From positions 42,284,001 through 42,348,000 of the forward strand of contig NW_026262679.1 in NCBI RefSeq assembly GCF_021869535.1: a DNA stretch of 64,000 nucleotides, in the 5' to 3' direction. Both the position numbers and the translations under genes were made by a program. This DNA comes from Mytilus californianus (Eukaryota). The notes beneath the pieces were generated by a model. That model saw nothing but the letters and a program-made list of their open reading frames with translations, was not told the DNA's origin and did no database searches. Below, one piece after another: positions 1,492-57,236 of the stretch. Each line of letters begins with the position of its first letter. Position 1 is the stretch's first letter.

Positions 1492-1721
1492 CCATTTCTG
1501 AGATTCTTCTGAAACTATAAGCTCTACATCATACGATGGTAAATCATATTCCTCAGATTCAAAACAAAGTTTCATGTTTATATAGGACTCTCCATTACCA
1601 CCACTAGTAAAATTAAAAGTACACAGATGTGGGCTTGTTTTACCAAACCATGATAAAGTGTAGGTTTTATCTAGGGAAACCGTCCTGGGAATCTCGTCAC
1701 AGTTGTAAGAATTAAACATTA
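1492..1721 (-). CDS. Paralog A exon 2: N-terminal part of CUB-like ectodomain (xMFNSYNCDEIPRTVSLDKTYTLSWFGKTSPHLCTFNFTSGG...KLCFESEEYDLPSY...QKW)
   Basis: Acceptor ttttttttcag (phase 1), donor TGG|GTAAGT (phase 0), 230 nt = 2+76 codons. Same Cys/Trp pattern (NCDE, LSW.G.TSP.LC.F.FT.G, CFES..DLP) and phases as exons at 25031 and 39188. I found no downstream exons in 1-1491, so they probably lie left of the window. Confidence 0.85.
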
Positions 1722-2131
1722 CTGAAAAAAAACGTTATGATTAAATAAAATGAAGGATGTTTAACTTTTCGAGATTTTCAGCTAAAATTTTGTTTTATTA
1801 TATGGTCATTTGTGCGATTCCCAAAAGTTTTGATTTTGGTGTCATTTTTGTCTAAATTTGATTCCATAATTGTGAAAGGTTTGGTTTTTAGAATAGTTGT
1901 ATATTTTCCAATATCTATATATAGTTTCGAACACCACTGACAGTAATTGAATTTTCAAAAACGCACACATATGGAGGATCAAATAAACTCCGGTATTTAG
2001 TAATTGACCACATCTTGTCCTGAGATAAAATTTACTCTCATCAGCAGCCGAATGTGTTAGATTATTTTAACGCATTTTGATTCTCGAATGTGACCTACAG
2101 AATTAGACTTTCCACCGGGTTTGTATTTACA

Positions 2132-2346
2132 AGAGCAACACGACGGTTACCATGTGTGGAGTAGGATCTGCTTATCCTCCGGAGCACCTGATATCAGCCC
2201 CGATTTTTGGCGAAGTTTGCGTTGCTCAGTGTTTTGTTTTGTTTTCTATGTTATGTTTTGTATAATATTGTTTGTTTTTTGCCATGTCATTATCAGTTTG
2301 TTTTCGACTTATGAGTTTGAATATCCTTTTTGGTATCTTTCGCCTT
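2132..2346 (+). repeat. ~220-bp interspersed repeat (cacgacgggtgccacatgtggagcagga...ggtatctttcgcc). Other copies ~5262, 10604(-), 26615, 27281, 30655, 31725, 31918, 51773(-), 53735
   Basis: Shared ccggagcacctgagatcacccc and gtcagtttattttcgacttatgagtttga cores. They explain many hydrophobic spurious ORFs in the track. Confidence 0.85.
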
Positions 2347-2840
2347 TTTTTAATTGTACAATCTTGAGATTAATGGTTTAGTCAGACGATAATATGCCTT
2401 TCGTTACAAAATGGTTTGTTTTGTTGTCTCGGCAATGCAAACATTTAGATAAATTTCATGAATATTGTATTTGTGTTTTTGTTTCATGTACTATGATGTT
2501 AGTGTATGCATGTTTTATGTCTTTGTAATTTTTCTTAAGTACAGTAGCGTCATTGTAATTACATGCAATATGGACGCAGTATCTTAATAGGTATATCATT
2601 TACGAAACACCTGAAGCTTTCCATCCAGGTCACAGTTGGGCGCTAGGGGTTATGGATACCCTTTTCTCTCTCTTTTCCATGTGAAAAATAAGAATAGAGA
2701 TGCTACTGTTTAAAATTTAAAGTAAACTATTTAAGAATATTTGTTGAATAAATACAAAAAAGGAAGAAAAAAGGGGGTCCATACCCCCAATCGCCTTTGG
2801 TCAGGGTTTACTGTTGTCATTCATGTTGTGCCTGATATTC

Positions 2841-3367
2841 ATATGATGAAGACATAATCTTTCAATCAGTTTAATTGAAGTCTGGAGCTGGCATGTCAGT
2901 TAACTGCTAGTAGTCTGTTGATATTTATGTATTATTGTCATTTTGTTTATTTTCTTTGGTTACATCTTCTGACATCAGACTCGGACTTCTCTTGAACTGA
3001 ATTTTAATGTGCGTATTGTTATGCGTTTACTTTTCTACATTGGCTAGAGGTATAGGGGGAGGGTTGAGATCTCATAAACATGTTTAACTCCGCCGCATTT
3101 TTGCGCCTGTCCCAAGTCAGGAGCCTCTAGCCTTTGTTAGTCTTGTATTATTTTTAATTTTAGTTTCTTGTGTACAATTTGGAGTTTAGTATGGCGTTCA
3201 TTATCACTGAACTAGTATATATATTTGTTTAGGGGCCAGCTGAAGGACGCCTCCGGGTGCGGGAATTTCTCGCTGCATTGAAGACCTGTTGGTGACCTTC
3301 TGCTGTTGTCTGTTCTATGGTCGGGTTGTTGTCTCTTTGACACATTCCCCATTTCCATTCTCAATTT
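2841..3367 (+). repeat. ~530-bp interspersed repeat (Mytilus-type, MITE/HINE-like). Inverted copy at 7195-7727
   Basis: ttggctagaggtatagggggagggttgagatctc...gcgcctgtcccaagtcaggagcctct core. The two copies are reverse complements by eye. Confidence 0.85.
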
Positions 3368-3689
3368 GATTTGATCAACATCAAAATTTCTCTAATGGGC
3401 TATTCATTTAAATCGATATAATAAAGAAAATGGATAGTTAACTTTGGGAAGCGAAATAAATGTAAAAAGACCTTGCATTCGTTATTAATGTCATAGAGAG
3501 CTCAAAGATGTTATGTGATTTGTGGTTTTTTTTGTTGTAAAGTATCTAGTTTATTGTATGTGTTTACTTACGATCAACTGTATTTGAAAGTACTGGTCCG
3601 GTAAATACTGAGACAATCGTCGCAGCACAAAAACTGATACATGCATAACTGTTATACATATTTATGGTCTCGAAGTCTACAAAATCATC

Positions 3690-6600
3690 AAAGATTAAAA
3701 AACAAAATCCCAATGCCAGTACCAAACAAAATGTCGTTTACCTCCCTTGAAAGTAAGATTTAGCAATATTTTTGATAGAAATGATTAGCAATAACACAAA
3801 CATGCCAAGCCTTTTAAACAAATATAAATGGAAGAACGATTTAAAAATAGACGAATATCTATCTACATTAGAAAAATGTTGTATGTGTGACATTGTGGAA
3901 AAAATATTGAGGGAAAATCAAATACAATTTGAAAAAAGGACTTACTTTGTATCATTCAATTTCGTTGTCAATTTTATACATGTATACACAATTTTGATTT
4001 TATTCTGTCCATTTAATATTGATTTTGTGTGAGCATTAATATTTACCCTATTTCATAATCATTTGTATATACACGTAGCCATGATCAGAATGACACTGGA
4101 CATTTAACTGGGCTTTCAAATGATATATATATAATTAGTTCAGTATTTCTTTACGACCGCATTTTTCTTAACCTTGTAATAAGACCCCGTTAATATATAT
4201 TTGGAAATCTTACATTTTTACTACCAAATTTTTACATATTTGTGACATCAGTTAATCACACGCACGGGGGAAAAATATATATTTCAAAACACTATCGAAT
4301 TTCATTGTCGTACAATTACTAGAACGATGTAAAAAGGAAAATCTGAAATTTTTATTCATTCTATAAAACTCATTAGTTTTCAATTCTGTGAAATCTTTCG
4401 GTTTTTTACCGAATATACAAAGATTTTTCTTCCGAGTTATAACAATTTTATTTTTATTTTTAATCCCGGGTCAGAATTTAGGGCACTTTAGATTAAGCGC
4501 ATTGAACATGAAAAAGCATTTTTGAAAATTTTGACAACCTGTAAACTCTTTAAAAAAATGAAATTACAATGACTTATTACAAGTTTCTTAAGGAGAACAA
4601 AATCTGTATTTTAAGCTTTTAAGGAAGAAACACAAAGTAACTCAATATGTAGGTCCAGAACCAGCAGTGTCCATATTAATACCACATAACGTGTTCTCAT
4701 ACTGAAATGCATGTAATATTTGCCACTGGAAATTTAAAACAATCAATTAGTATCATCTTTTTATATTCATATCGGGGTCAGATGGCCATTGACGATCGCT
4801 CAATCCTCTCAACTAGTTCAAAGATTTTCTTTAGAAAGCGATATGTTGTTGATAAATGAATTTTTGCTTTTGTGGTGTAAAAGAATCAGGGGTTAAAGGG
4901 TCACTTAGTTTTTTTCATTTACATAAGGAGTCGCCAATTATTTTGTCACCCTGTCAGTCTGATATCACTTTGTTCAGCTTCCAGTCCTTCACTACGTTAT
5001 TTCTACACCTACATGGGTTTGATATATAGGTTAACTCATAGTACTCCGAGAGGACGTTGCCACTAGCATGCCACCAATCTGGTACATGTATTAGAAATAC
5101 TATCTACATGAAGCATTCAAGAGGCATTTAATCCTTTGAGTTACTATCTTAGAAACATCAAATGAAAAAATAAAACAAAAGTCATATTTTAGATAGTCTG
5201 CGGTAAAGGTTCTTTCAAAATATACTGAAAATTCGTGTTTTAACTTAACGTATTTTATAAGAGTGACACGACGGGTGTTGAATGTAGAGCAGGATATGCT
5301 TACCCTTCAGGAAGACCTGAAATCGCCCCCAGTTTTTTTGTTTTTTTTTTTTTGGGGGGGGGGGGGGTCGTGTTACTCAGTCTTTGGTTTTCTATATTTA
5401 TGTTTTGTGTACTGTTGTTTGTCATCTTGTCGTTTCATTTTTTTTTTGTCATGGAATTATCGGTTTGTTTTCGACTTATCTGTTTGAATATTCCTTCGGT
5501 ATTATTTGCCTCTCTTTTATTCATATTAATTCGAAGTTTTCATTTATCTTACATAATTTAAAAAATATTCAAAAAATACTCTTGTCACTTCGCATTGCAA
5601 TTTAGATAATTTTGTTCATTTCACAGCATGAAAGAGTCATATATTATGGAAATATGCATACAGAATTTATGAATAAAGAGTCTGAAAATGAAATTCCCAA
5701 TGGATATCAGATGGAATACCGGCATGAAGTATTTATGAAAACACTTAGTAGGTAATTTCCAATTACTGGATCTCGTACGTATAGTTACTAAATGGCGAGG
5801 TTACAACTCATTGAAACTGTCAGCATCCAACAGATAGAATATAGGAGTAGATTGGAATCGGTTATTAAACTATTTGAGACTTGGACGCATATTTATTAGA
5901 TATCAAGTAAGTATTTGAAAAATCAATTGATGGATACAACTTCTCAAATAGATTTTTATTTTATTTTGATTTGTATCATATGTTTTAGATCGTTAATGTG
6001 TTCCTTAAAAGCTTTCTAAATTCTGTTTCGATTTTCAATAGTATCTATGGAGAGGCCGCTTTATCGAACAAAGAAAGCGCACGATCTGTTCAAAATTGTC
6101 TGCACAGATTTTTATCGGCGAGTTTCCAATTTGTGTCTGCGACTCTACAATGAACTTATTTGAGTAGGTCAGCTGAAGTTTCTACCATGTGTTTTTGTTT
6201 GCATATATAATAACATGAATTAATCCTAGATTAAACTCTAAATTAATATAAAACATAATGTAGCATTTTGGTACGTTTAATCTCGACGTAAGCGTTTAGT
6301 ACGTGTGATTTAAATATACTGTAACTGGGATTAATTTTTATTTCACAGCCACAAAAGCAAAATGGAAGCCACGAATAAAAGATTTTGAAAGGGAACTTGA
6401 TCAAAATGTTGTTTATTTGCGGATACGAGATAACTTAGAAAAAAAATGACAAGTGAATTCAGGAAAAGTTAGAAAAAAAGCTTGTCATACCTTTGTGTTA
6501 ATCATTCTATGAAGGAAAAACAATCGATATCATTGACACGTTATTGAAAAGTAAGCAATGTTTCAATCGTCCCTGGAAAGAATTCCTGGGAAAATAAGAC

Positions 6601-7059
6601 GAGGATTTGTTTATCAATCTTCCGAAGACATTCTCCCTTCTTTAAGAAAAAGACATGATTCGCGCACAACTAAGGAAAAGGAAAAGATTCAACGCAGAGT
6701 TGTTAGACATGATCTCTATCCTCCTTTTAGGGAGGAACAAAGTCGGCCGGGAACACCCGTAGTGGGTACCCGGCTTGAACGATATGCAAGTGGTAAAGGC
6801 CGAAGACCACAGATACCATATGAAACGGCTGATATGTATGCTAATAACGGGATGTACAAGATGCAACAAAAAGGTTCAGCAACAAGTCGACGAGAAGGAT
6901 CTGGAAAACAATTGCTTTCTGCAAAGAGATGTCCTACTCCACTTCCGAACGAAAAACCGCTCACAAAATTATGTTGGAACCATCACAGAGGTCTGTTTTA
7001 CACGAAATACTAAGATCACATCACTTGATTTTTGCTTAAAGTGTCACGTCTATCACTAA
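3690..7059 (+). pseudogene. Decayed multi-exon gene of unknown family on the + strand, inside paralog A intron 1
   Basis: Exon-like segments 5627-5906 (acceptor tttcacag, donor CAA|GTAAGT), 6042-6163 (YLWRGRFIEQRKRT...) and 6349-7059 (long frame with scattered stops, ...MIRAQLRKRKRFNAELLDMISILLLG...). The motif QNVVYL occurs at both ~3727 and ~6402. Several stops and frameshifts. Confidence 0.4.
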
Positions 7060-8194
7060 CTTTAAAGAACTGTTAAATTGCATGATTTCCTCAGCATTAT
7101 TGCTTAAGTTTTCAATCTGAAACAAAACTTGCTTGCATATGCATATTATTTCCCTAATGATCATATAAATAAAAAGTTCTTATTTTTCATAAATAAAATT
7201 GAGAATGGAAATGGGGAATCTGTCAAAGAGACAACAACCCAGCCAAAGAGTAGAAAACAGCCCAAGGCCACCAATAGGTCTTCAACACAGCGAGAAATCC
7301 CTGCACCCGGAGGCGGGCTTCAGCTGGCCCCTAAACACAAATGTGAACTAGTTCAGTGAAAATTGACGTCACACTAAACTCCGAAACATATAAATGAACT
7401 AAAATTAAAAAAACATACAAGGCTAATAAAGGCCAGAGGCTCCTGACTTGGGACAGGCGCAAAAATGCGGCGGAGTTAAACATGTTAAGTAAGATCTCCC
7501 CCCCTCCCCCTACCTCTAGCCAATGTAGAATAAACACAAACACATGTAGCAATACGCACAGTAAAACTAAGTTTAAAAGAAGTCCGAGTCCGATGTCAGA
7601 ATAGGTAACAGCAGAAACTAAGCAAAATGACAATGGTACATAAATTAACAAAGGACTACTAGCAGTTACTGATATGCCAGCTCCAGACATCAATTAAACT
7701 GATTGAAAGAATATGTCTTCATCATATGTCATATATCATATATACATCATATATACTAAACTGTTTACTGTCGTCATAAATTAATGGAATCTCGTTAGAG
7801 GTTGTTTTAAGTTATGTATATACCTTTACGTATTTTTGTAATTTAGAAAATTTGGTGTTGAAAGTGTTTAAAATCTTCTATAGTCTGCGAACAATTAGTC
7901 AACTACTTAACTAGCATCGGGACGATTTAGTGCTTGGTATGTTGTATAAACACCTGTCTAATCGATGCTGATGACCTTATTATCTATGCATGTTGACCCG
8001 TAAACATAATTATACAACATTGTTAATGTTTTGTTGTTGTTTTGTATTTGTCTCATTGAAGTAAAATACAAAGATCTCAAAACATTCATTTGTGATAAAT
8101 CTGATGTAAGGATTATTAAAATATTGTAAAAAAAATAGGGTTGAAGATTTTAAAAAGGGTAAACTTTTAAAGACAGACACCTTTGCCAAAAGAA

Positions 8195-14856: not shown

Positions 14857-14936
14857 TCATTGATTGGTCGGAGGTGCTGATGGAGGTGTATAACGTATAG
14901 CGGTTTCATAACTTGGAGGAGGCGTTAATGAATCTC
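14857..14936 (-). CDS. Paralog B terminal exon (GDSLTPPPSYETAIRYTPPSAPPTNQ*), PPxY motif
   Basis: Acceptor ttttgtctgttgcag (phase 1). 80 nt to TGA. Homologous 80-nt exons at 32965 and 55695. The five B exons sum to 1041 nt = 346 aa + stop. Confidence 0.88.
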
Positions 14937-17936: not shown

Positions 17937-18380
17937 CTTGTAATGTATTGTAATCCGGTGGTGGTACGGAAGGCTCCGGCATTAAAGTCGACGTGTGAGT
18001 CTGTTCTGGCTCTTGTGGTATTGGATTCATTCCTGTTGTTTCCAAAGATGGATCTTCATGACTCTCGCCTCTCACACTTAAAATTAAAGTTGTACAGCAA
18101 CCCGCCCATGCAGTACAACACTCCCCACATGGCTTACATATATTTTCACAATCACAGTCACATGAGGGTAAATTTGCTGTACAGTCAAAACATTCACATT
18201 TGAAACAATTACATACAGCCTCGCCAATACAAGCAATACCACCACCAATGCTTTCTACTCCTCTTCTAGGTCCTCGGCCAGACTTGATGCAGAAAAACAT
18301 ACCAAATGCACAAACAATAAAGATTACAACAGAAACAACAGTTATACCTATGTTGCTGCTGGTTGGTGTAATCTTTTTAT
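17937..18380 (-). CDS. Paralog B exon 4: TM helix (IGITVVSVVIFIVCAFGMFFCI), Cys-rich cytoplasmic block, PPPDYNTL
   Basis: Acceptor tttgaatttcag, donor G|GTATCA, 444 nt (phase 1-1), open throughout. Aligns with 34514-34936 (KPCGECCxAWAGCCTTL). Confidence 0.9.
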
Positions 18381-19009
18381 CTGAAATTCAAAGCAGAGAA
18401 ACCAGGTTGATTAACGATTTAAAAAAAAGTAAATAACAAAAAAAAATGTACTGCAAGGGAAATTCAAAACCGAAAGTCCTTTATAAAAATGGCAAATCAA
18501 AAGCTGAAACACATCTCATGCATAGAAAACAACTGTTATATTCTTGACTTGGGTACAGGCACTTCCTTATGTAGAACATTGTGGATTAAACCTGGTTTTA
18601 TAGCTAGCTAAATCTCTCACTTGTATGGCAGTCGTATAACCGAGGGTTTTCCGGCTATAGTAATTCAAAGACGGAATACCAATACTTTAAGCTATATTAG
18701 CAAGGTCCGGACAGTACCAGACCTAAGACCTCAACTGACTTCCGAAAATATCATTCAAAAGCATATATATAAAATATGTATCTATAGAAAAGGATTAGTG
18801 TCCAACGGATTAACTTGTCAACGTCAAAGTGATTTCAATTACGACGAATATATATTTAACAATAGAATTAATTAAATACAAAGAAAGGTAAAAGGTTAGA
18901 TAAACGGATTAACAAACTATCACTTTAGCACTTAAAATATATTGTCTGAATTTGCTTTATTTCTAATTCACATTTTTCCAAATCTTCCAGGTTATATTCG
19001 CCACGGAAG

Positions 19010-19240: not shown

Positions 19241-19308
19241 GATTCTCAGCCACTACTCCACCTAAACTCGGTCTCCGAGTTTGCTGAATTGAGACAATTT
19301 CACTTCGG

Positions 19309-23660: not shown

Positions 23661-23808
23661 CTCTAAAACGAAATGCTGTGACTTTGATGACGAGGTAGGT
23701 CTTTGGTAGTGGTTCTATATATCTATTTGGTAACATAATGGTTATGGTTAACATGTACGCCTGCTTTACACAGGTTTTCTCTATAGATATGTCGTCTCTC
23801 GTATAATA
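23661..23808 (-). CDS. Paralog B exon 3, ectodomain part 2 (YYTRDDISIEKTCVKQAYMLTITIMLPNRYIEPLPKTYLVIKVTAFRFR)
   Basis: Acceptor tttttgtccactgcag (phase 0), donor G|GTAATA (phase 1). 148 nt, the same length as C exon 3. Shared IEKTCVKQAY and KTYL.IKVTA. Confidence 0.9.
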
Positions 23809-25030: not shown

Positions 25031-25272
25031 CCATTTTGATTTACTCCCTGTATAATTTTTTACTTGCAGCTCAACATTACCCATTGAATATGGTAAATCA
25101 AATACCAATGACTCAAAACATACTGTATACGATCTATGCTCACTACTCTCTCCACCAGTAAAACTAAAATCACATAGTTTTGGAGAAGTTTGTCCATGCC
25201 ATGATAATTTATAAAATGTGCTCTCCGTTAGTCGTCTGACGTATTCGTCACAATAATGAGACGCAAACTGTA
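25031..25272 (-). CDS. Paralog B exon 2, CUB-like ectodomain part 1 (QFASHYCDEYVRRLTESTFYKLSWHGQTSPKLCDFSFTGG...VCFESLVFDLP...SKW)
   Basis: Acceptor tatttcag, donor TGG|GTAAGT, 242 nt = 2+80 codons, no stops. About 60/78 aa identical to C exon 2, with 14 synonymous codon differences by manual count. Not in the ORF track. Confidence 0.9.
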
Positions 25273-28281: not shown

Positions 28282-28739
28282 TGTATGGCTTACTAGCGAA
28301 CTCGATAATATATGAGTAAACTTACAATTAATTGAATAGAATCCATAACAACTGTTCATATGAAGGCCAATCAAGAAAATTAAAACGACATTTTGCTCTG
28401 TGATAAACTGCATTCTGAAAAATGTATGACGAATATTACTACATGTGTTTGAACATCAATGTAATGATGTATACTAATACAGGTGCTTTTTAGCAATTTA
28501 TATAACCACTATACAGTGAATTATAATAGAAGCCGTTTTGGTAACATTATAAACAATCTCGACTCGTTCGGTAACCCAAATTTGTTTAGATCCAACGCAT
28601 TTGGACTTTGATGAATAATTATCTCATTGGCAATGATACCACATCTCCTTATACATGAACATATATTAAAGGCTTTTGATTGAACGTATTTCAAATGAAA
28701 TTGTTTCCTTTGTAAATACTGTTGATTTAATAGAATTAA

Positions 28740-29292: not shown

Positions 29293-30894
29293 TTAATAAG
29301 TCATGTCAACTTCCTGTATGGCGTGTTTACTAAATTAAGATAATACCTTTCTTACTCATTCAAGAAGATGAAGTCCTTATATATTGCCAAGAATATTTCT
29401 TCTGTTTTTATCCATTTTGTTGAATCAATAATTTCAGTAAATGTTACACAAATTGAAATATTCCACAGCATTATTAGAGCATAGAAACGGAACTTATTTG
29501 TACATTTATTATGACCTAAAAATAGATATTGATTGGGGTTTAAAAACAGCATTATAATCGATATACATTTAAATGATACACAACTAAAATTCGTGTGGGT
29601 TCTATAAATCTTTGAACATAAACTATTAAAAATCAATTTTTCATATCTAATATCTGAATTCTATCCTATTTTTTGCTTATTGTTATACATCCAACTCGGA
29701 CAATATTTGCCAGAATTTTGTGTAAATTATTTGAAACGTTTCCCTTAGGTCTCCATAGTAAATATGTATTTCACAATCTAATCAAAGGCATATATAGTAC
29801 CCTATTGTATGTCTTTGATCAACCATAAATAGATGGAGGTACAGTTAATGACCACACCATTTACTCAAATGCAAATGACAATCCTTTGACCAAGATGAAC
29901 TCCTTTTACAATGTTTTATATACAAATATGTAGGGTAAAATTATGTTAATACCAATTCATTCTTTCATTTCCTTATATTTCCTAAAAAAGGAATTTATAC
30001 ATTAGACCTAATGGGCAAATTTTTGACTACTTAAAGGAAAATTCTGAAAAAAATGTTAAGAGTTCTTTTACTAAATAGATAAATATATTCAATCTGCAAA
30101 AATAAACAACGAAATTAAATTAAAATTTTTTTAACTTCCATATTTTCCCAATATATAGATTTCTACGTCAACTGAGACAAAAATAATTATCAAAGATTTT
30201 TTTTTAGAAAAATGTTAAACAATCAAAGTAACATTATATACGAACCATCAAACGTCGTCCTTAACGACGTTGTTAATGATAATCTCACTATCCCTGATGA
30301 TCAAAGCTGAAACTGGTCGGATACTGAATGTTAACCTAACATTTTATTGAAATTTAATCGTGTTACTCAAGATATTAAATATCGGTCATTTATATAATCA
30401 TAAATGTAAAAAATAGATGTATATTTCATTTATGTATTGTTTAGAGTATCGTTATTCCTTACGATCTGACCATCTCGTAAAAATGATCCCTTTATCTAGA
30501 TGTTTTTATGATTGTTAACGATTTTGATCAGAATTGGAAAGGCTGTCCTCGCTTTTAATCACTAGACATTAATGATAAAAAAAAAATGACTCCACAATTC
30601 GAACAGAATATTGAAAAATTTGGTATCTGAATGAATATCATAATGAAACTGTTGTGTTTTGTGTATTATTGTTTGTCTGTGTGTCTGCTTGTCTGTTGGT
30701 CTTTTTCTTTTTTAGCCATGGCGTTGTCAGTTTATTTTCGACTTATGAGTTTGAATGTCCCTTTGGTATCTTTCGCCTCTCATTTTTAAAGTACTTTTAT
30801 CATATTATAAATTTTAAAAAAACCTAATCCAAACGGGAACTTTTGTATCAAAATTTGCGTTTATAATTTTACATTTTTAACAGTATGAGTTTTG

Positions 30895-32964: not shown

Positions 32965-33044
32965 TTAATACTTGATCGGAGGAGCTGAAGGTAGTTTATA
33001 ACCTGTAGCGACTTCATAGGTTGGAGGAGGCGCTAATGGATCTC
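32965..33044 (-). CDS. Paralog C terminal exon (GDPLAPPPTYEVATGYKLPSAPPIKY*)
   Basis: Acceptor ttttgtctgttgcag, 80 nt to TAA, PPxY motif. Confidence 0.88.
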
Positions 33045-34513: not shown

Positions 34514-34936
34514 CTTGTAATGAATGGTAATTCGGTGGCGGTCCGGTAGGTTCAAGTATTAAAGACGACACGCTAATCTGTTCCGGCTCCTGTGGTATTG
34601 AATCCATTTCTGTCGTTTCCGACGAATGATTTTGAGGACTCTCGCCTCTCACTCTTAACACGAGTGTTGTACAACATCCCGCCCATGCAGAGCAGCATTC
34701 TCCGCAGGGCTTGAGTATATCGTCACAGTCACATGATGATAAATTGTCTCTACAGTTGCAATCACCAAAACATTTACATCTCAAACAATATGATAACGCT
34801 TCACCAATACATGAAAGGACGCCACTAGGTCCCGTATCCGACTTAAAACAGCGAAACATACCACATGCACACCCAATAAATATCGCAACAGAAAACACAG
34901 TTAAAATAATGCTGGAGACTGTTACAGCTGGTTCTT
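34514..34936 (-). CDS. Paralog C exon 4: TM (IILTVFSVAIFIGCACGMF), Cys-rich block, PPPNYHSL
   Basis: Acceptor ataattttag, donor G|GTATTT, 423 nt (phase 1-1), open. Homologous to 17937-18380. Confidence 0.9.
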
Positions 34937-36270: not shown

Positions 36271-36418
36271 CTTCTAAACGAGAGGCTGTCACTTTAATGA
36301 TGAGATAGGTCTTTTGTGTTGGCTCTGTATATCCATTTGGTAAAATAATGGACATGCTTAACTCGTATGCCTGTTTTACACAGGTTTTCTCTATAAATCT
36401 GTCAGCACTAGTATATGA
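36271..36418 (-). CDS. Paralog C exon 3 (SYTSADRFIEKTCVKQAYELSMSIILPNGYTEPTQKTYLIIKVTASRLE)
   Basis: Acceptor ttcttttattcattgtag (phase 0), donor G|GTGATA (phase 1), 148 nt, open. Confidence 0.88.
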
Positions 36419-39187: not shown

Positions 39188-39423
39188 CCATTCACTTCCC
39201 GTTTTATTTTGTACTTGCAGCTCCACATTACCAGAAGAAGACGGCAAATCAAATAGCAATGACTCAAAACAGACTTCATACGATCTATGATTATTGAACT
39301 CTCCTCCAGTAAAACTAAAATCACATAGTTTAGGAGAAGTTTGTCCATTCCATGATAAATTATAAAATTTACTCTCTGTTAGTCGTCTTGCGTCCTCATC
39401 ACAATTATATGACGTAAACTGTA
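39188..39423 (-). CDS. Paralog C exon 2, CUB-like ectodomain part 1 (QFTSYNCDEDARRLTESKFYNLSWNGQTSPKLCDFSFTGG...EW)
   Basis: Acceptor ttatttttag (phase 1), donor TGG|GTAAGT, 236 nt = 2+78 codons. Lies within ORF 39167-39517. Confidence 0.9.
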
Positions 39424-40250
39424 CTAAAAAATAATTAAATATTTGTATATAACTAAAATTTGTAGACTTATAAAGAGAGCGAAAATTAGAATTTTTCTTA
39501 GTTTGAGAATATTTCAAGCCATTAAATTATGTTAAGACCGATTAATATTTCAGGAAATTTCCAGTGTATATACAAAAACAATCTAAACCAACAAAAATAC
39601 CACGAGACAAAAGACATTCATAGTCATAAACCATCAACAAATGATTAAACGTAGAAAGTCCGTTTAAAAGACAAACTGAATTGGAATGCAAATGGAAAAA
39701 TACAATTTTCAAATTAAATCATTTGCCAAACATTTCTATCCTGATAAAATATACATGTAATATTGTTTTCAGACAATGTATATGTGTTCATTGATACTGT
39801 TATTATCTACACTATACACAAAGGAAAATTAATATTTGGATAAAATCAACAACTATGAATTAAAGAGGAATACAAAAAACATCTGCGATCATGCATTCGT
39901 CAAAGACACAAAAAATAATACACTCAAACACTCAAGATATGATTTAATCTAACAATATTGCAAAGATGTTCCTTAAAACAACAGTTTTGTTGAAAAGCTT
40001 TCCTTCTAAAAAAAACCTTAAAACTAATAATTAATATGTATGACTAACATTCTACGAGTTTGCTTAAATTCACGACATAATAAGTATACTTACAATCAAC
40101 TGAATATATTCCATAACAACTGTTGATATGAAGACAAAACAAGAACACGACGGCAAAAGTATGCTCTCTAGTGACCTCCATTCTAAAAAGCATTAACACA
40201 GATTATTTCACGTGTTTTAACCTCAATGTATATAACTACTGGTGTGTAAA

Positions 40251-46000: not shown

Positions 46001-49000
46001 TCACCATACATGTAGATATGTAACTAAGACATTGAATAATAATACAGGCTGTTTGTTACATGTACATTAAAAACAATCCCAACTGAACGGGTTTTTAAAA
46101 GTATTTCTAATATGTTTCCCCATTGTTACTGTTGATTTATAAATACGGATTGACGTTTAACTTTGTGTGATGTACATTGTATATTGTGTTTCCTTGATTT
46201 AGATATTAATTTTCTTACTCATTTAAGAAAGCGAAGTCCTTATATTTTGCACAGAATATTTCCTTTGTTTTAAATCATCCTTAGAATCAATAATTTTAGT
46301 AAATATCAAGCATATTGCACATACTATATAAACTAATTAGGGCATAGTAACGGGTCTTATTTCTACATATATTATGACCTAAATATCGATATTGAATGGG
46401 ATTTAAAAACAGGTTTATTTATAAATATTTATTTAAATTATGTCCAACCTAGTTTATGAGTTCTATAAATGATAGTAAAAGTTTAATGTCAATTTTAACT
46501 TATCATAGAACTTAATATACTGACTTACAAATCGTCAAAAATTGACGAAAAGTACAGAAAAGCACTTGCGCCTTATTCCCCTAGAACGGACGAGTCTAAA
46601 TAGAATTAAACTTATATGACAGATAAACAGTCCTTCGACTGATATATACAAATAACAGTCGAAAATGGAACACGATTTAACGGTTATATTATTTAATATT
46701 TGAAGCTTCAAATAAACACTGTGGGATGTTTGTGTGTGTGAGAGATAATGATACACCTTTTCGTCGTTATTAAGTACGAGAGGTTAGCACGTAAAATCAA
46801 ATATTACGTAATTAGATAAAATTTGAATTTTAAGTATTTGTTTGTTTTGTTATGAAATGAATTATTTGTTGTTGTAATTTTGAAGTTATAGATATTCCGA
46901 TAATAACTTTTAAGATACCAATTTTACTGCAACTGTAAACTCCAAAATTCTATTTTGATTTTTTTTTTCTATATTTCAAAATTCAATTTTCAGTCAGTTT
47001 CAATCATAAATCTTTTTTCAATATGATAAATGTGCTCAATTATGACGTCATAGTTTTTTATGAATAAGAGCTTGCTGGATTTTATTTTTGACAAAATGTT
47101 TACATATTTTGTAATCAAATTTTTATTCTTATTGCTTATGTTACATTTCATGGAATGTTAGGGCCAATACCTACTCCTTTATATTTATAAAATTCAAATT
47201 TCTAAAAATGATTTATTATTCTATAAAAGAGTTTATTAAAACACTATACAGACCTCATTCACAACTGACCAATGAATGTTCTGCACAGAAACTTTTTTTT
47301 TATATTTGGCATTTTTTTATCCGTCAGTAATCAGGAAATATATTCTTAAATACCAGACTATTAAAAATCACGAAGTAAATCTCTTCCAACAATTAATTTT
47401 TTAAATAGCTTGTTTTCCAACTTCCTATCAAATATACCCAAATGCATAAGGTTCTTGAAGTTTATTCATGTAAATGTTCATTTTGGTTTGAATTTCGCAC
47501 TTTGCCTACGCTACATGGCATGCGAATTCAAAATGATGACATTAGTGTCGTCTGTCCAGTCCAAATGATTTGTGAATTTTTATTTTACAAAAAAAGCAAT
47601 GACTGTAAACTTCAATGAATAAAATCGTTTTTAAACATAACAATTGTAACATCTTCAGGATCAAGTAATGTAGATTTGAGATGTTCGTTCAAAATGTGTA
47701 TGAACGATATATTTTGGAAAAATGCATCATCATTTTTTCAAAACAATGTACTACAGTTATTTTAGTCATCCGTCGTTCACTGTCTTCGTCTTAATTCAGC
47801 GAACACTCTGATCTTTCCTAGCTTTATAGTTGCTCGCTGTAATTATATTTCGGAATGCTGAGTCCACAATGGTCATAAAGTTTTTGGCCTTTTAATTTTT
47901 TCATTCGATCGTCACTGATGAGTCTTTCGTATAGTGACCGAGCGTCTGTCTTACATAATTATAAGCCTGGTATCGTTGATGAGTTTCTTATTTGTCAAGA
48001 CCACAATAAGACAAAAGTCAACATAGTAAAAAAATATTGGAACAATATATGGTAATGTTGAGTGTTTTGTAAAGAAATAACTAAAAATAACCATAACATT
48101 ATAGTTTTCATTATTATCGTATAAATGGAAATATAACATTATATTAAGTGTATAGGCATTGCACTAAATACTATCCTGTACAGTTTACAAAGATAAATTC
48201 AAGAAGATGTTGTATAAAATATACTCTGAAATCAGCCATTGATAATAAAGTGTCTTTTTCGATGATATCATTATGCTGCTATGTAGTTTTAGCTCTCTTA
48301 GTTACTTCTAGAATTCTATGAAATTGCACGTCTTATTGTTGTACTGTTTGTACTTTTTTGTACTTTATAGTTATTATATATTGGACTGATTTTACTCTAT
48401 TGATTTTAACTGCACCTACATGTGTTTACAATGTATAATTCAACTGATCGAGATTAAAGAAGGAGAAGATGAAATATTTCAAAAACTTAAAATGTGTTCT
48501 TGTACCTGTCGGCATATCGTTGATGGTAAATCACGTTAAATAAATCCCTTTCTTTCTTAAGACATGAGACGGTTTTGGGCTTGACGTTTTGTATAGGCAT
48601 CTGTCTAATAGAAAAACAAAGGATACTTGTATGGGGTATCCATCCATGACACAAAATCAGTACATGCACAGCAAAAAACACACAAAAAGCAAAGGAACAG
48701 TGCTTTTATTGCTGTTCTTCATCTCAAAGTCACAGTGGGGCCTTCAACAGGGAGCAAGACAACTCTCATCTCACTGCAAGTTTAAGACGGCCCCTAGTAC
48801 CGGATTGAACGGAATTCTTTGCAAATATAATTTGGATAGACTTTGTAAGATGTAACACCACCTAATCGGGTCCGGTCAAAAAAGAACATATTGCAAAGTA
48901 GTACATATAAACTTTTACAGTATGTTGACTTACGATGTCTTGATTGTTCTGTGTCGTTGGTTTGTTGTCTCATCAAAGTATACCTCCCATCACGTTTTAT

Positions 49001-52000: not shown

Positions 52001-52799
52001 TCGTGTTGCTCATGTAAAAAGTAAAATAACAAAAATACCGAACTCCAAGGAAAATTTAAAACGGAAAGTCCTATATCAAATGGCAAAATCAAAAGCTCAA
52101 ACACATCAAACGAATGGAAAACATGGAAAGTACAAGCCCGGTGATAAGTCTAAATCGGCAGGTCACAATCGGGGAAAAGGGGACAGGATTGTGGGGGCTG
52201 AAAGTAGAAATAGATGAAGCCTATTAATGTTAAGGTCGGTAGATCAAATTCATAATGTCAAAAATAGCTGTACATTGTATGACATTTTCAAGATCTTGGT
52301 TCATTGAAGCAATTGCTTAAAGACTGCTTTAAATTATTTTTTTTTTAACTTTTATTAGGCATGTAACTCCAGATCTTGTCGGTTAGCCTGTATCATGGGA
52401 AACCCAATTTGCTTTCTAGATAGATCCATATTTAGTTGTGTTAATGGATGATGACTCGAATATGCCATTATGAATTTATAATGCATTTACTACATGTACA
52501 AGTTATGATTACGATAAAAGTGATTTTTTTCTTTGTACCTTCAAGCATAGAAAATTGAAACACAGAGACAGACAATACATCTAACAAACATTTGTTTTCT
52601 TTCAATAAATGTGCAATATGGGTAGCATCTGTTGGTAGGGCCAATTTTTTACTTGTATTGATTTTGTATGGACATTACGGTTATCATATTTTGTTATAAG
52701 GATATGATCAAACCAGCCCTGATATAACCCAATCTTGTGCAATGCCCAAATTAATTAAATGTACAGAAAAAATAAAAAGAGGCAATTAGGCATGTTTTG

Positions 52800-53084: not shown

Positions 53085-54381
53085 AAATTGTTAATAAAAA
53101 GATCAAGGTTTATTGTAAAATATACAATAGTTCTTTAAAATATTGCACCTGGACAAAGTAACAAATTATTAAAGCTTTAGAGCCAGACAGTAAAGATTAT
53201 ACTGTAAATTTTCATGATGTTGTACTGAACTGAATAATTAGAAAGTGAACCCAGACAAAAAAATTAAAAGAGTTGTCTAAGATTGCACAGTCTCATAAAA
53301 AATCAGAGTTACATCAGCTTATTTCAGTCACCATTCATGCCATTGATGAAGCTCGTAAAAATTCATCCACATTTGGAGCAAGTGAGCTAAATAATTATGC
53401 ACGCTTTTTCAGCTGTTGATATAAGCCTACAGTTTTTACCCACTATAAGTACACAGGTAGACCATAAGACCATGATGACCGATATTTGCTATTCATTTGT
53501 AAAATATCATTATAATTATTGATAAAGTTAATTATTTTGCAAAGTTGATTTAAGCTATCTTATTATTCTGCTGGAAAAGGCCAACTAAACAAATATGAAT
53601 TATTTTAAAGAACAACAGCTGCTTACACATGAAAGGTATTTAAGGATTATATAAAACTGTTTTTTATTATCTCAAATTCGATATCGATCTCTTTTAGCCT
53701 TAATTATGTCAGGTACCACATATGGAGAAATATATGCTTATCCTTCCGGAGAATCAGAGATCACCCACAGATTATGCTAGTATTAGTGTGGCTAAGTCTT
53801 TAGTTTTTTATGTGGTGTTTTTTAGATTGTTATTTGTCTTTTTGTCATTTTTCGTTTTTTTGTTGTTGCCATGGCACCGTCAGTTTCTCTTCGACTTATG
53901 AATTATAAACGTCCCTTTTGATACCTAATTTACAAAAGTGTCCTTACAAACAACGTTATATATTGCTGGGTCTTCCAAGTACTCCAAGAAACCTGTTTTT
54001 CTATAGGAATAAATATCAATTTTATAAGCAATCACACCATGGCAACCGAGTTACTGTAACACTACCTACTCTAGGGGCGGTGTAAATCAGAAATTCCAAA
54101 GATCCGTAGGAATACAAAAAATCTAAGCTACTTTCCTCTTCCCTTTACACAAGTATTCCCTATTTCAAACTTAAAGACAATTTAAAGAATTGGTCCTATT
54201 TTGTTTAATTAAAAATGATCAACATGGATACAAATATCTTGCTTATGGAGGAGATAAATCATACTTTGCAAAATAATTTTTTTCTTATTCAAACAATAAT
54301 TCTCTGAAACTAACATTATCAAGATACATGATTTCGAACAAATTTTTTACGTTTAAAGTACGTTTCTATCCTAAAACAAAA

Positions 54382-54542
54382 GGCATTTCATAGAAACCAA
54401 CTGTACTCCTCTTCTTGCCGACTTGTTCCTTTATTCATATCAGGCTGACTTCACTTAGGAAGAATGAAAAGATGCTAGCATTAACCTTTAACTACACGCT
54501 CCGCTATAAAGATGATGTCCTCTCATTAAATAGTCAAATTTG
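54382..54542 (+). mobile_element. Reverse-transcriptase fragment (Penelope-like)
   Basis: Degenerate translation GI..TNC.PLLADLFLYSY.ADF...FNYT.RY.DDVLSLN contains the RT motifs around YxDD. Confidence 0.75.
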
Positions 54543-55694
54543 CATTAAACAATATAAATAAAATTATATTAATCACTAAACATGATAAAAAATTAAGGAT
54601 GATCTGTATCCAAAGAAAAAGGTATTGTGAATTAAGATTTCGCAAAATATTTTGGTGGTGCTGTCCTACAATTAACCAATATTCAATTTAGCACAATAAC
54701 CATATTCGTATTGCCAACTTGTTTAACCGTTTTACATTTAAGTCTTCTTCATCTCAAACAGAAGTGTACTTTCTCTGCATTTCATTTATATTATTTTTCT
54801 TGAAGATTCAAAAACACTTATATACCTATATGGAGCTATTTTCTTTCAGAATAATGGGTCTTTCTTTTGATAAAAACAACTCAAACGATACCAAGTTCCA
54901 ATGAAATGTGCCTCAAGGCATAACATATTGACCTTTATAGGGTCATTATCTACCGTGATTGAAATAAAACTAGACTGTGAATTAGTTTATTAAAAATATG
55001 TAATTCATTTGAGAGTAATCGTGCGTTATTGCAAATTGGGATTTTATTGTACAATTTTTCATTTTTACTAGCTTTTAAAAGGTTGAAGGCAGATACCAAC
55101 CATCCTTTCCTCCATTTATTTGACTGAAATATTTATAAAAAAAACATCGTAAACGCAGAGTTTAGTTTTCAAAACAAATAATCTGAAGGTTTGTTTATTA
55201 ATCGGGACAATTGAAACATTATTTGGGATACATTCAATAATGTTAAATTTTTCATAATAAATGTTAAAACAAGGCAAATTCTATTACATTTATTTGTAGG
55301 ATTATTAAGAAATAAAAGTATACAATCTTGTTGATTCACATCTTATTGGAAATCGTACTATGACTTATGGATGTCCATTTTTCGTGTTGCATGTACAACA
55401 CACATTAGGATGTCAGTATTGACCATGTGGTCTGTCTTTATTTTAATAAATCCTGACAGCAGTCGGTGTGTTTAACGACAAAAATCCTACTAAAAATATA
55501 CATTATCTATGACATGCATGTACCTTCCTGATTCACTTGAACCCGACCTTTTTTATTAAGCGTTATCTAATTTGTCTCGTTGGATTCGCTAACATTCTTG
55601 TAGGGGCACCAATTGCACTGATAATTAAAACAATAAAAAGTTCACGTACTCTCTCTCACACACGTATATCGTAATTAGTGATTGTGCAATTATT

Positions 55695-55774
55695 CTAATA
55701 CTTGGTCGGAGGTTCTGACGGTAGTTTATAACCTGTAGCGACTTCATAGCTTGGAGGAGGTGTTAAAGGATCTC
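55695..55774 (-). CDS. Paralog D terminal exon (GDPLTPPPSYEVATGYKLPSEPPTKY*)
   Basis: Same acceptor and 80-nt length. The adjacent intron 56390-56680 is homologous to C intron 33490-33850. Confidence 0.8.
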
Positions 55775-57089
55775 CTGCAACAGACAGAAAAATCATCTGA
55801 AATGTAGTGTGGAATTTAACAAGTATGTTTATTGTCAAAAGTATGTTTATATGTCTCATTACCAATTTTATTATCATCGAGTGTTTCATGACATTGAAAT
55901 ACTAATTTGATTTGATGGTAAATGAATCATTATCATAGTTTGACAACTTTTACCTGAGACAAAATGTATAATTTAGACACCAAGACCCTTTTTTGAATTT
56001 TGTTATGCTAAATACTTGTAAGTAGTGCTTTGATGCATTGATGAACTAACTATAAAAATAAGAAGATGTGGTATGATTGCCAATGAGACAACTCTCCACA
56101 AGAGACCAAAGGACACGGAAATTAGCAACTATAGGTCACCGTACGGCCTTCAACAATGAGCAAAGCACATACCGCATAGTCAGCTATAAAAGGCCCCGAA
56201 ATGACAAATGTAAAACAATTCAAACGAGAAAACTAACGGCCTAATTTATTTACAAAATAACCAACCTGTTACATTTACTGCATATATATTTCAAATAGAA
56301 ATATAGCTATGTCTCCTTTTTTTTTTTTACAAATAACAGCATGTGAAACAAATCATGAACTTTAACCCTTCGGACGTCAACAGTACTCGAATTTGATTAG
56401 TTATTCTTTAACTCATTGGCAAGATCATACAGTGTTATCTACATTCGTCATTCCGTCATTTCAAAATCAGAAAATTATACTTTTTTTTTCGTTGTACCTG
56501 CATATATTTAGCTAATTTTCATTTTTTGTTTTGAGAGACCTCCTTTTGAATAATCTCCCTTGTAACAACATGGAAGGGCTTTTATGCTTACTGGGAACAA
56601 CTAATTTTCTTTTCTTTATTTCTATAAATATCATCGTAATAGAAATTGATGAATCTTATATTCATATTTTCCCTAATGTTTAGCCGATTTATCCTGTACC
56701 AGGCCTGCTGATTATTTTTTATCTAATCAACGTGTGGTCCGTTTGGTCGCATTTTTTCTCATAACAAACTAGTTGATTGTGCGCTATTCAACATTTTACT
56801 AATCTATATAAATATATAGGTACCAGTATGTGAAATTTTAATATGTCATTGTTAATGCAAAAGAATAGATTTCAATAATTTAGTAGGGTGTCTTTCAGCC
56901 ATTTGATCTTATTTTATGGTAAATCATGACAAATGCAGAATATCTAATTAGATATACATACATTGGTCAATAATTTCATTAACATCATAATTTCAAGAAA
57001 CTCATTTCATATGATTTTAATATTGTCGTTCAAAGTGACAATTTTGTATATTTTGCAACAAGAATATTTTCCATCATCTAAAAAACAAG

Positions 57090-57236
57090 TACCTGCCTGT
57101 TTAAATTTCTGCTTTTTACTGTATTTTTGTTTGTTAGAATAATAGATGTATGCAATACCCCAATATGACAGCAACCCAAACAACACAAAAGAAAAATACT
57201 AAAAGTCATCTCGGTCGACGTATATAAATGTCCTTC
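57090..57236 (-). pseudogene. Disrupted TM-like exon, possibly the penultimate exon of paralog D
   Basis: Hydrophobic stretches in overlapping frames (FFCVVWVAVILG / GIAYIYY) then basic SNKQKYSKKQKFKQA and a phase-1 donor G|GTACTT. Needs frameshift corrections. Not clearly alignable to B or C exon 4. Confidence 0.35.

What the first reader, a model, noticed from the sequence alone, without database searches (positions are those of the whole stretch)
1492..57236. Tandem array of uncharacterised CUB-like / TM / Cys-rich / PPxY membrane proteins
Seen: at least four head-to-tail minus-strand paralogs with conserved exon phases and lengths (exon 3 is 148 nt in B and C, terminal exon 80 nt in B, C and D). 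B splices to an open 346-aa frame. B versus C exon 2 has 14 silent codon changes and 18 aa changes, consistent with a constrained coding sequence. Exon 2 of A is much more divergent. Established: PPxY binds WW domains of Nedd4-family HECT ligases, and YxxL is a sorting motif. Single-pass proteins with a juxtamembrane Cys cluster and PY motifs occur in the Shisa-like/WBP1/VOPP1 group. Inference: the 4-Cys ectodomain has CUB-like spacing (C..W.G..C.F, VCF..FDL, final IKVTA strand). The array could be a lineage-expanded, ubiquitin-regulated surface receptor family with diversifying ectodomains. I recognise no named gene with this architecture.
Basis: partly seen in the sequence, partly recalled or inferred. 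Interest (0 to 1): 0.82.

Follow-up and report, generated by a model that had tools for sequence, protein, structure and literature searches.

The report
Mussel-only CUB-like PPxY membrane protein array
The window (Mytilus californianus) holds a tandem cluster of real, spliced genes from a family seen so far only in Mytilus, encoding single-pass membrane proteins with a CUB-like outer domain, a cysteine-packed inner segment and two PPxY motifs; RefSeq already annotates two of them as 'uncharacterized', and their function is only inferred.

Summary
Genes B and C are complete minus-strand paralogs with five coding exons and conserved phases, giving 333 and 324 aa. Model C equals RefSeq LOC127734614 of Mytilus californianus letter for letter. 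The last 303 residues of B equal LOC127734613.

RNA contigs and raw reads confirm B's exon 2-3 junction.

A is cut by the window edge; only exons 1 and 2 are visible. D is a 3' fragment: part of intron 4, the 80-nt last exon and its 3' flank. The array is therefore two whole genes, one truncated by the window and one relic.

Two AlphaFold models of the ectodomain have modest confidence (pLDDT 61 and 65). Both superpose best on solved CUB domains: the top 19 hits are all CUB, Z 7.8-9.6. No CUB sequence profile matches.

The Shisa/WBP1/VOPP1 label fails, because the cysteine cluster is cytoplasmic, not extracellular. B versus C dN/dS is 0.31-0.54 in exons 1-4, so a diversifying ectodomain is not supported.

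A profile search of 1.84 billion proteins found relatives only in Mytilus and in unnamed contigs. A second tandem pair lies at another locus.

Recruitment of NEDD4-type ligases through PPxY is inference. This is a new variant of a known kind, of moderate interest.

The parts
29347..29471 (-). Gene B, non-coding 5'UTR exon (e0); its 5' end is not defined
   Evidence: The joint 28414|29347 (GT..AG on the minus strand) is present in contigs of X1, X2 and X3. X1 contig piece 29347-29471. An in-frame stop lies before the ATG.
28326..28414 (-). Gene B exon 1: ATG at 28413, signal peptide, 88 coding nt, phase 1
   Evidence: The acceptor is used in RNA.
25031..25272 (-). Gene B exon 2 (242 nt): first part of the CUB-like ectodomain
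   Evidence: Contig pieces cover 25031-25272 exactly in X1, X2 and X3.
23661..23808 (-). Gene B exon 3 (148 nt): second part of the ectodomain, ending in the IKVTA strand
   Evidence: The joint 23808|25031 is seen in 8 raw RNA reads and in contigs of 3 runs.
17937..18380 (-). Gene B exon 4 (444 nt): TM helix, cytoplasmic Cys cluster (16 Cys by my own count from the printed sequence), first PPxY (PPPDYNTL)
   Evidence: Runs X1-X4 (RNA by the tool's guess) hold 0.51-0.62 of the words of 17800-18500, and the exon makes up 0.63 of that stretch. Identical to P0011.
14857..14936 (-). Gene B exon 5 (80 nt including the stop): second PPxY (PPPSYETAI)
40094..40181 (-). Gene C exon 1 (88 nt, signal peptide)
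   Evidence: The joined model equals RefSeq protein P0008.
39188..39423 (-). Gene C exon 2 (236 nt)
36271..36418 (-). Gene C exon 3 (148 nt)
34514..34936 (-). Gene C exon 4 (423 nt): TM, Cys cluster, PPPNYHSL
32965..33044 (-). Gene C exon 5 (80 nt): PPPTYEVA
46212..46333 (-). Probable 5'UTR exon of gene C (homologue of B e0)
   Evidence: 29315-29609 resembles 46178-46470 at 75% identity. The M. coruscus model P0009 reads through this stretch. Not tested with RNA.
1492..1721 (-). Gene A exon 2 (230 nt): divergent ectodomain exon. The rest of the gene lies beyond the window start.
   Evidence: dN/dS against B is 0.39.
3572..3659 (-). Likely gene A exon 1 (88 nt, phase 1, GTAAGT donor, 3' end ...AGTTGATC as in C)
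   Evidence: No RNA test.
55695..55774 (-). D: an intact-looking 80-nt terminal exon copy (PPPSYEVA) with its acceptor
   Evidence: 84% aa identity to C exon 5.
55533..56513 (-). D: extent of homology to the 3' part of C (distal intron 4, exon 5, 3' flank), interrupted by a repeat at 56051-56260
   Evidence: No exon 1-4 homologue was found upstream.

Best explanation
This is a tandem cluster of a gene family known so far only from Mytilus.

Shown:
- The genes are transcribed and spliced (B directly). They are conserved in at least four named Mytilus species.
- Exons 1-4 evolve under moderate purifying selection (B vs C dN/dS 0.31-0.54).

Predicted from sequence:
- Each gene encodes a type I single-pass membrane glycoprotein of about 325-335 aa.
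- The parts in order are: a cleavable signal peptide; one ectodomain of about 135 aa with four invariant Cys and N-x-S/T sequons; one TM helix with Cys near its inner end; a cytoplasmic segment of about 60 aa holding 13-16 Cys (conserved core CxPCGxCCxAWAGCCTTLV); and an acidic Ser/Thr-rich tail with two invariant PPxY motifs. The first PPxY is extended to PPxYxx[L/I].

Predicted from modelling:
- The ectodomain adopts a CUB-like beta-sandwich.

Inferred mechanism:
- The CUB-like module binds an extracellular or lumenal partner.
- The juxtamembrane cysteines are S-acylated and hold the tail against the membrane.
- The PPxY motifs recruit WW domains of NEDD4-family HECT ligases. The protein, and probably a bound partner, is then ubiquitinated and sorted through endosomes, as shown for Comm/PRRG4 and LRAD3 and proposed for LRP10.

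My odds: real gene family with this architecture 0.9; CUB-like fold 0.7; PPxY-ligase coupling 0.5; S-acylation of the Cys cluster 0.5.
For: Gene models and RNA:
- Both models are open with canonical splice sites.
- C is identical to RefSeq P0008, and 303 residues of B are identical to P0011.
- Spliced RNA comes from the minus strand: joints 23808|25031 and 28414|29347, with the first mate on +.

Conservation:
- dN/dS is 0.31-0.54 in exons 1-4.
- Orthologues exist in M. trossulus, M. coruscus and M. galloprovincialis.
- Divergent paralogs elsewhere keep the same exon plan. Exon 3 is 148 or 151 nt, and both PPxY motifs are kept.

Topology:
- There is a single hydrophobic segment, and basic residues follow it in B (KSGRGPRRG). 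Sequons lie in the ectodomain.

Fold:
- VIA-align against 48,161 PDB chains: with model 2, ranks 1-19 are all CUB domains. Kremen gives Z 9.6, rmsd 2.6 A over 102 residues.
- Model 1 gives a similar, CUB-dominated list.
- The highest Foldseek TM-scores are for CUB domains of TSG-6, C1s and PCPE-1, at 0.54-0.57.
- In the ESM Atlas shape search, CUB clusters give TM 0.59-0.62.
- In the language-model feature search, the named hits are CUB or CRF-BP_N.

Mechanism precedents:
- PPxY binding to NEDD4-type WW domains: PMC5578492, PMC11315911.
Against: - No CUB, or any other, Pfam model matches, even at E 1.
- The structure models are only modestly confident (pLDDT 61 and 65), built from shallow alignments. 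Z values of 8-9.6 are only a little above the tool's stated background of 7-8. No Foldseek E-value reaches 0.001.
- The third Cys lies before the F..FDL strand rather than after it, so the disulfide pattern is not canonical for CUB.
- No experiment or interaction data exist. PPxY is a short motif. The role of the Cys cluster is a guess.
- RNA evidence covers only B exons 0-3 directly.
Confidence: 0.6

Rival explanations
1. The cytoplasmic Cys cluster is a membrane-tethered, metallothionein-like metal-binding module for Zn, Cu or Cd. The family would then work mainly in metal sensing or handling, with PPxY-driven turnover as a secondary role.
For: Sixteen Cys (my count) fall in about 65 residues, with many C-x-C and CC units such as CNC, CEC, CDCDC and CGECC. 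The pattern is conserved across divergent paralogs.
Against: No metallothionein or zinc-finger profile matches in Pfam or PDB. Cys within and next to a TM are typical S-acylation sites. There are no metal-related data.
Confidence: 0.12
2. The family is a diversifying immune-type surface receptor array, whose ectodomains evolve fast to track varied ligands.
For: The genes duplicate in tandem, and exon 2 of A is only 45-49% identical to exon 2 of B and C. A second array exists elsewhere. CUB domains occur in many recognition proteins.
Against: The B-C ectodomain is more conserved (71%) than the tail (62%). dN/dS is 0.31 and 0.51 for the ectodomain exons. The orthologous ectodomains are 88-92% identical across species. 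No site-level test was possible.
Confidence: 0.12
3. The proteins are divergent members of the Shisa-like (STMC6: Shisa/WBP1/VOPP1/CYYR1/TMEM92) superfamily.
For: They are single-pass proteins with PY motifs and many cysteines, as in that group (PMC5578492).
Against: The defining extracellular C*C*CC*CC cluster is absent. The ectodomain has four spaced Cys in an all-beta domain of about 135 aa, and the Cys cluster is on the other side of the membrane. No Pfam model matches.
Confidence: 0.04
4. The array is decaying or non-functional, made of pseudogenes or annotation artefacts.
For: D is only a 3' fragment. Neither word search returned a protein with A's exon 2, and their length window runs from about 0.55 to 1.75 times the query. 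Intron 3 of B is full of segmental duplications.
Against: B and C have open frames with intact splice sites. B yields spliced RNA. dN/dS is below 1 in exons 1-4. Orthologues are conserved in four species.
Confidence: 0.03

Closest known systems
LRP10 / LRP3 / LRP12 and LRAD3 (LDL-receptor-related type I proteins with PPxY tails)
   Same: LRP10 has CUB domains outside, one TM, and a proline-rich cytoplasmic tail with PPxY. The two PPxY motifs of LRAD3 activate Itch/NEDD4 (PMC11315911).
   Different: The mussel proteins have no LDLa repeats (no Pfam hit). They have a single CUB-like domain that no CUB profile recognises, and a cytoplasmic Cys cluster the LRPs lack. There is no detectable sequence homology.
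Comm / PRRG4 / Rcr1-type short PY-motif transmembrane adaptors
   Same: These are single-pass proteins whose cytoplasmic L/PPxY motifs bind NEDD4/Rsp5 and redirect partner membrane proteins (PMC5578492). The last-exon motif of B, PSYETAI, resembles the extended PSY[DE]xA[LV] motif of Comm and PRRG4.
   Different: The ectodomains differ (Gla or none, against CUB-like). There is no sequence homology. The motif resemblance is short and is not kept in C (PTYEVAT).
Shisa-like STMC6 group (Shisa, WBP1, VOPP1, CYYR1, TMEM92)
   Same: Single-pass, Cys-rich proteins with PPxY tails. CYYR1 acts on WWP1 (PMC11399591).
   Different: In that group the Cys cluster is extracellular, N-terminal and follows a C*C*CC*CC pattern. 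Here it is cytoplasmic, and the ectodomain is a beta-sandwich.
CUB domains of Kremen1, MASP-1/3, C1s, neuropilin, cubilin, TSG-6
   Same: These are the best structural superpositions of the predicted ectodomain: Z 8.0-9.6, rmsd 2.6-3.6 A, 102-114 of 136 residues. The first Cys pair has CUB-like spacing, about 25 residues apart.
   Different: Aligned identity is 6-14%, and no HMM matches. The third Cys sits in a non-canonical place. Ca-binding residues were not examined.

Membership tests
CUB domain (Pfam PF00431 and clan) | Sequence match to the family profile | tested here: not met
   No CUB hit at E up to 1, either on single exons or on full-length P0008, P0011, P0012 and P0009. There is no PDB sequence hit with the ectodomain profile.
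CUB domain (Pfam PF00431 and clan) | Beta-sandwich of about 110 residues that superposes on solved CUB domains | tested here: met
   The top 19 of 48,161 chains are all CUB, Z 7.8-9.6. Model 1 gives a similar, CUB-dominated list. The ESM Atlas shape search gives TM 0.59-0.62 to CUB clusters. Caveat: pLDDT is 61-65.
CUB domain (Pfam PF00431 and clan) | Four Cys forming C1-C2 and C3-C4 disulfides | tested here: inconclusive
   Four Cys are present in every sequence that covers their columns. The first pair is 25 residues apart, which is CUB-like. The second pair is 42 apart, with Cys3 upstream of the F..FDL strand. No model coordinates were available to check the pairing.
CUB domain (Pfam PF00431 and clan) | Ca2+-binding acidic triad of the ligand-binding CUB subset | not tested
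   This needs a residue-level structural alignment.
Shisa-like / STMC6 (Shisa, WBP1, VOPP1, CYYR1, TMEM92) | Extracellular N-terminal C*C*CC*CC six-Cys pattern just after the signal peptide | tested here: not met
   The ectodomain has four isolated Cys and no CC pairs. The feature is as described in PMC5578492.
Shisa-like / STMC6 (Shisa, WBP1, VOPP1, CYYR1, TMEM92) | Single TM followed by cytoplasmic PY motifs | tested here: met
   There is one hydrophobic segment and two PPxY motifs. The first PPxY is kept in 11 of 12 rows covering it; one row has LPPSY and one lacks the Tyr. The second is kept in all full-length members and in L001.
Shisa-like / STMC6 (Shisa, WBP1, VOPP1, CYYR1, TMEM92) | Match to a family profile | tested here: not met
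   Pfam scan of the full-length proteins gave no family.
PY-motif transmembrane adaptors of NEDD4-family ligases (functional class: Comm, PRRG4, LRAD3) | Cytoplasmic L/PPxY that binds WW domains and changes trafficking of the protein or a partner | not testable with these tools
   The motif is present and conserved. Binding needs a pull-down or a cell assay.
LRP3/LRP10/LRP12 subfamily | LDL-receptor class A repeats alternating with CUB domains | tested here: not met
   No Ldl_recept_a hit. The ectodomain is a single domain of about 135 aa.
Metallothionein-like metal-binding domain | Match to an MT profile, or a conserved C-x-C / C-x-x-C cluster arrangement that binds metal | tested here: inconclusive
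   There is no profile match. C-x-C density is high and partly conserved. Metal binding cannot be tested here.

The most novel reading that the evidence does not exclude
The family may be a new type of receptor-adaptor. A minimal CUB-like sensor would be wired, through a membrane-apposed cytoplasmic Cys cluster that binds metal or acts as a redox or acylation switch, to PPxY-dependent NEDD4 ubiquitination. Metal load or redox state would then set the surface level of the protein and its bound cargo. This would be a mussel-specific invention with no homologue elsewhere.
Probability: 0.1. Interest if true: 0.7.

Novelty: new variant of a known kind. Interest (0 to 1): 0.38.

Why it matters
The finding gives a name and a testable architecture to a set of 'uncharacterized LOC' genes that seem confined to Mytilus. 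Their parts are a CUB-like ectodomain, a very Cys-dense cytoplasmic juxtamembrane segment and two PPxY motifs.

If the PPxY-ligase coupling holds, the family would add a lineage-specific branch to the small class of transmembrane NEDD4 adaptors. It would also offer a compact model for how a CUB module is coupled to ubiquitin-dependent sorting.

The Cys cluster is the least explained part and the one most likely to hold something new. The array itself is ordinary for a bivalve genome rich in local duplications.

Tried and rejected
- Pfam on single exons and on full-length proteins: no family.
- NCBIfam: nothing.
- Word-based protein search with the exon-4 ORF of C, length window 101-320 aa: nothing. 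This was a length-window effect, not absence.
- ESM Atlas feature search with exon 4 of B: chance-level hits only, 0.80.
- Foldseek against PDB with both models: no E-value at or below 0.001 and mixed jelly-roll hits. VIA-align and the Atlas shape search were more informative.
- PDB sequence search with the ectodomain and whole-family profiles: nothing.
- Rfam over the window: nothing.
- Search for exons 1-4 of D upstream of 55774, and for exon 3 of A below 1492: none found.
- P0006 (1551 aa, He_PIG/fn3 repeats), the sixth hit of the big search at E 1.6e-4: rejected as unrelated.
- Literature search for the four LOC identifiers: no paper.
- The joined exon models were not sent to any search or fold tool. 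Exons were searched by reference, and the identical database proteins P0008 and P0011 were used instead.


Full report
**What is in the sequence**

The window is AT-rich (GC 0.29-0.35) and eukaryotic. tBLASTn of the long minus-strand ORFs against the window found three copies of an ectodomain exon, near 1.5, 25 and 39 kb. It found two copies of a TM/Cys-rich exon, near 18 and 34.7 kb. A sensitive self-comparison then showed further conserved blocks. Translation and reading of the splice sites gave two complete five-coding-exon genes on the minus strand.

| Gene | e1 | e2 | e3 | e4 | e5 |
|---|---|---|---|---|---|
| B | 28413..28326 | 25272..25031 | 23808..23661 | 18380..17937 | 14936..14857 |
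| C | 40181..40094 | 39423..39188 | 36418..36271 | 34936..34514 | 33044..32965 |

- Exon lengths are 88/242/148/444/80 nt for B and 88/236/148/423/80 nt for C.
- Every intron is GT-AG, and the phases are 1,0,1,1.
- The joined frames are open, giving 333 aa for B and 324 aa for C.
- The 346-aa figure for B is not reproduced. An in-frame TAA lies in the upstream UTR exon.

**The other two 'paralogs'**

- A is cut by the window edge. Exon 2 (1721..1492, 230 nt) is intact.
- I found a likely exon 1 for A at 3659..3572. It has the same 88-nt length, phase and GTAAGT donor, and a 3' end ...AGTTGATC like that of C. No exon 3 is seen before the window starts.
- D is not a gene copy. Homology to C covers only 55533-56513: the distal part of intron 4, an intact-looking 80-nt exon 5 at 55774..55695, and the 3' flank. 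A repeat interrupts it at 56051-56260.
- No exon 1-4 homologue lies in the 8 kb upstream of D, even when divergent family members are used as queries.
- The array is therefore two whole genes, one gene truncated by the window and one 3' relic.

**RNA evidence**

Runs X1-X4 (organism A; RNA is the tool's guess) hold 0.51-0.62 of the sampled words of 17800-18500. Exon 4 makes up 0.63 of that stretch. A probable DNA run holds 0.94.

I laid one raw RNA run and three contig sets on 23600-29590, and saw the following.
- The exon 3|exon 2 joint 23808|25031 appears in all four runs: 8 raw reads, all with the first mate on +, so the RNA is minus-strand, plus one contig in each contig set.
- A joint 28414|29347 in three runs reveals a non-coding 5' exon (29347-29471 or longer). 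It is spliced one base before the ATG.
- One 1307-nt contig carries e0-e1-e2-e3 and 695 further bases. That length fits exon 4 (444) plus exon 5 and about 170 nt of UTR.

**Identity and range**

A profile of exon 4 (B plus C) was searched against 1.84 billion representative proteins. It found six proteins. One is an unrelated Ig/fn3 repeat protein.
- The named hit is an uncharacterized protein of Mytilus trossulus.
- Word searches with that protein and with a family alignment added M. californianus LOC127734614 and LOC127734613, M. coruscus and M. galloprovincialis proteins. All are 'uncharacterized' or 'unnamed' and carry no Pfam domain.
- My model of C equals LOC127734614 exactly. The last 303 residues of B equal LOC127734613 isoform X2, which has another first exon. 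The window is therefore M. californianus, whose reference genome is described in PMC9710001. RefSeq independently reached the same models.
- Many shorter hits are exon-4 ORFs on short unannotated contigs. They fall into at least two further subtypes.
- Two long contigs from ENA assemblies (L001, L002) carry such subtypes with the whole exon plan. L002 has two head-to-tail genes. Their exon 3 is 148 and 151 nt. Exon 4 of each keeps a PPPSY motif. An exon-5 copy with a second PPPSY was found in L001, which matches L002 gene 1 at 95-98% DNA identity.
- So the family forms tandem arrays at more than one locus. No hit came from outside Mytilus-like sequence. However, only the cytoplasmic exon was used in the exhaustive search.

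**Protein anatomy**

- There is an N-terminal hydrophobic signal ending ...NSCYG.
- The ectodomain is about 135 aa, with four Cys that are invariant in every sequence covering them, including the divergent subtypes and A. It carries sequons such as NLS and NKT/NYT.
- There is one hydrophobic segment of about 23 residues. In B it is followed by basic residues.
- A stretch of about 60-65 residues then holds 13-16 Cys by my count. Its best-conserved core is CxPCG[EQ]CCxAWAGCCTTLV.
- An acidic Ser/Thr-rich linker follows.
- PPxY number 1 lies at the end of exon 4, always as PPxYxx[L/I]. PPxY number 2 lies in exon 5.
- With a signal peptide and one TM, the Cys cluster and both PPxY motifs are cytoplasmic.

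**Fold of the ectodomain**

- No sequence profile matches.
- AlphaFold2 on a 7-row alignment gave pLDDT 61. A 13-row alignment with divergent exons from L001 and L002 gave pLDDT 65 and pTM 0.64, with all five models at 60-65 and residues 50-135 at 70-86. Both models are all-beta.
- In an exhaustive structural comparison with 48,161 PDB chains, CUB domains dominated the top of the list for model 1. For model 2 ranks 1-19 were all CUB: Kremen, neuropilin-2, MASP-1/3, Gpr126, cubilin, TSG-6, C1s, enteropeptidase and PCPE-1. Z was 7.8-9.6, rmsd 2.6-3.6 A, with 102-114 residues aligned.
- Foldseek gave no significant E-value. Its highest TM-scores were for CUB domains.
- The ESM Atlas shape search gave TM 0.59-0.62 to CUB clusters.
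- In a language-model feature search, the named hits were CUB or CRF-BP_N.
- The Z values are only slightly above the tool's stated background. The models are also modest, so I put the CUB-like fold at about 0.7.
- The third Cys is not where canonical CUB domains have it.

**Selection**

B versus C dN/dS by exon is shown below.

| Exon | dN/dS |
|---|---|
| e1 | 0.54 |
| e2 | 0.31 |
| e3 | 0.51 |
| e4 | 0.36 |
| e5 | about 1.2 (only 25 codons) |

- The B-C ectodomain is 71% identical and the cytoplasmic part 62%.
- Orthologous ectodomains are 88-92% identical across species.
- This is moderate purifying selection. It is not evidence for a diversifying ectodomain.

**Mechanism**

- Shown: these are expressed, spliced, conserved genes with the stated architecture.
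- Established knowledge: PPxY binds WW domains of NEDD4-family HECT ligases. Single-pass PY proteins such as Comm, PRRG4, Rcr1, CYYR1 and LRAD3 use this to control trafficking or ligase activity (PMC5578492, PMC11399591, PMC11315911).
- Inferred: the mussel proteins are CUB-type binders whose fate, and perhaps that of a partner, is set by ligase recruitment.
- Inferred: the Cys next to the membrane are S-acylated.
- The alternative is that the Cys cluster binds metal. I cannot exclude it.

**Comparison with known families**

- The closest architecture is LRP10/LRP3/LRP12, with CUB domains, one TM and a PPxY tail (PMC11315911). The mussel proteins lack LDLa repeats and show no homology to them.
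- The Shisa-like group is rejected as a home, because its defining Cys cluster is extracellular.
- The family is best described as an unnamed family, seen so far only in Mytilus, that is a new variant of the PY-motif transmembrane receptor/adaptor kind.

- Joined exon models were built only inside scripts, to check frames and to compare with database proteins. They were not sent to search or fold tools.
I confirmed only that partial exon-4 copies exist there.

Noticed in passing
window 18280-23309 (intron 3 of gene B): Recent segmental duplications. 18349-19294 matches 21762-22708 at 99.9%, and 21178-21779 matches 22708-23309 at 99.3%. Partial copies of the 5' end of exon 4 (the TM-coding part plus its acceptor) lie at 21154-21297 and 22708-22827, at 91% identity. 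The scan's own note s1-330667 reads these as alternative TM exons. I did not test that with RNA.
   Followed up: partly
window 19309-20061 (-): A 250-aa ORF inside intron 3 of B. It has a weak CCHC zinc-knuckle match (E 0.034) and a long coiled-coil-like stretch. It may be gag-like or a captured gene.
   Followed up: partly
window 26834-27094, 24305-24491, 34954-35163, 45729-45938, 56051-56260: A 190-260-bp interspersed repeat, found in both orientations. Summed depth in RNA contigs and raw reads is very high on both strands, up to about 10^5 word depth. Rfam has no match. It is probably a high-copy SINE/MITE-type element.
   Followed up: partly
window 2840-3372 and 7191-7728: A 540-bp inverted repeat pair at 85% identity. 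It flanks about 3.8 kb that holds a 151-aa ORF (6558-7013, +) with no family. The layout resembles a DNA transposon with long terminal inverted repeats.
   Followed up: no
window 2126-2381, 5253-5605, 27271-27526, 31763-32386, 51599-52019, 53712-53916: A repeated element with an ORF-like stretch (...LTLPEHLRSPPVF...FSTYEFEYPFGIF) in both orientations, at 68-86% identity between copies.
   Followed up: no
window 201-686; 12888-13806; 40247-40889 with 42446-43101: A 37/74-bp minisatellite (13 copies). A 147/295-bp satellite-like array. A pair of inverted arrays at 93% identity just upstream of exon 1 of gene C.
   Followed up: no
window 46212-46333 and 49354-49464: The M. coruscus gene model P0009 (404 aa) reads these stretches as coding N-terminal exons. 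In M. californianus the first is homologous to the non-coding 5' exon of B. The M. coruscus extension is therefore probably an annotation artefact.
   Followed up: partly
L002 7658-10243 and 17867-20254 (ENA assembly contig); L001 is its near-identical counterpart: A second head-to-tail pair of divergent family members at another locus, next to DDE_Tnp_4 and LINE-type (RVT_1, Exo_endo_phos) ORFs.
   Followed up: partly
P0011 (RefSeq LOC127734613 isoform X2): This isoform replaces the signal-peptide exon with a 4-residue start (MSKK). It would give a protein without a signal peptide. I did not locate that exon or test it.
   Followed up: no
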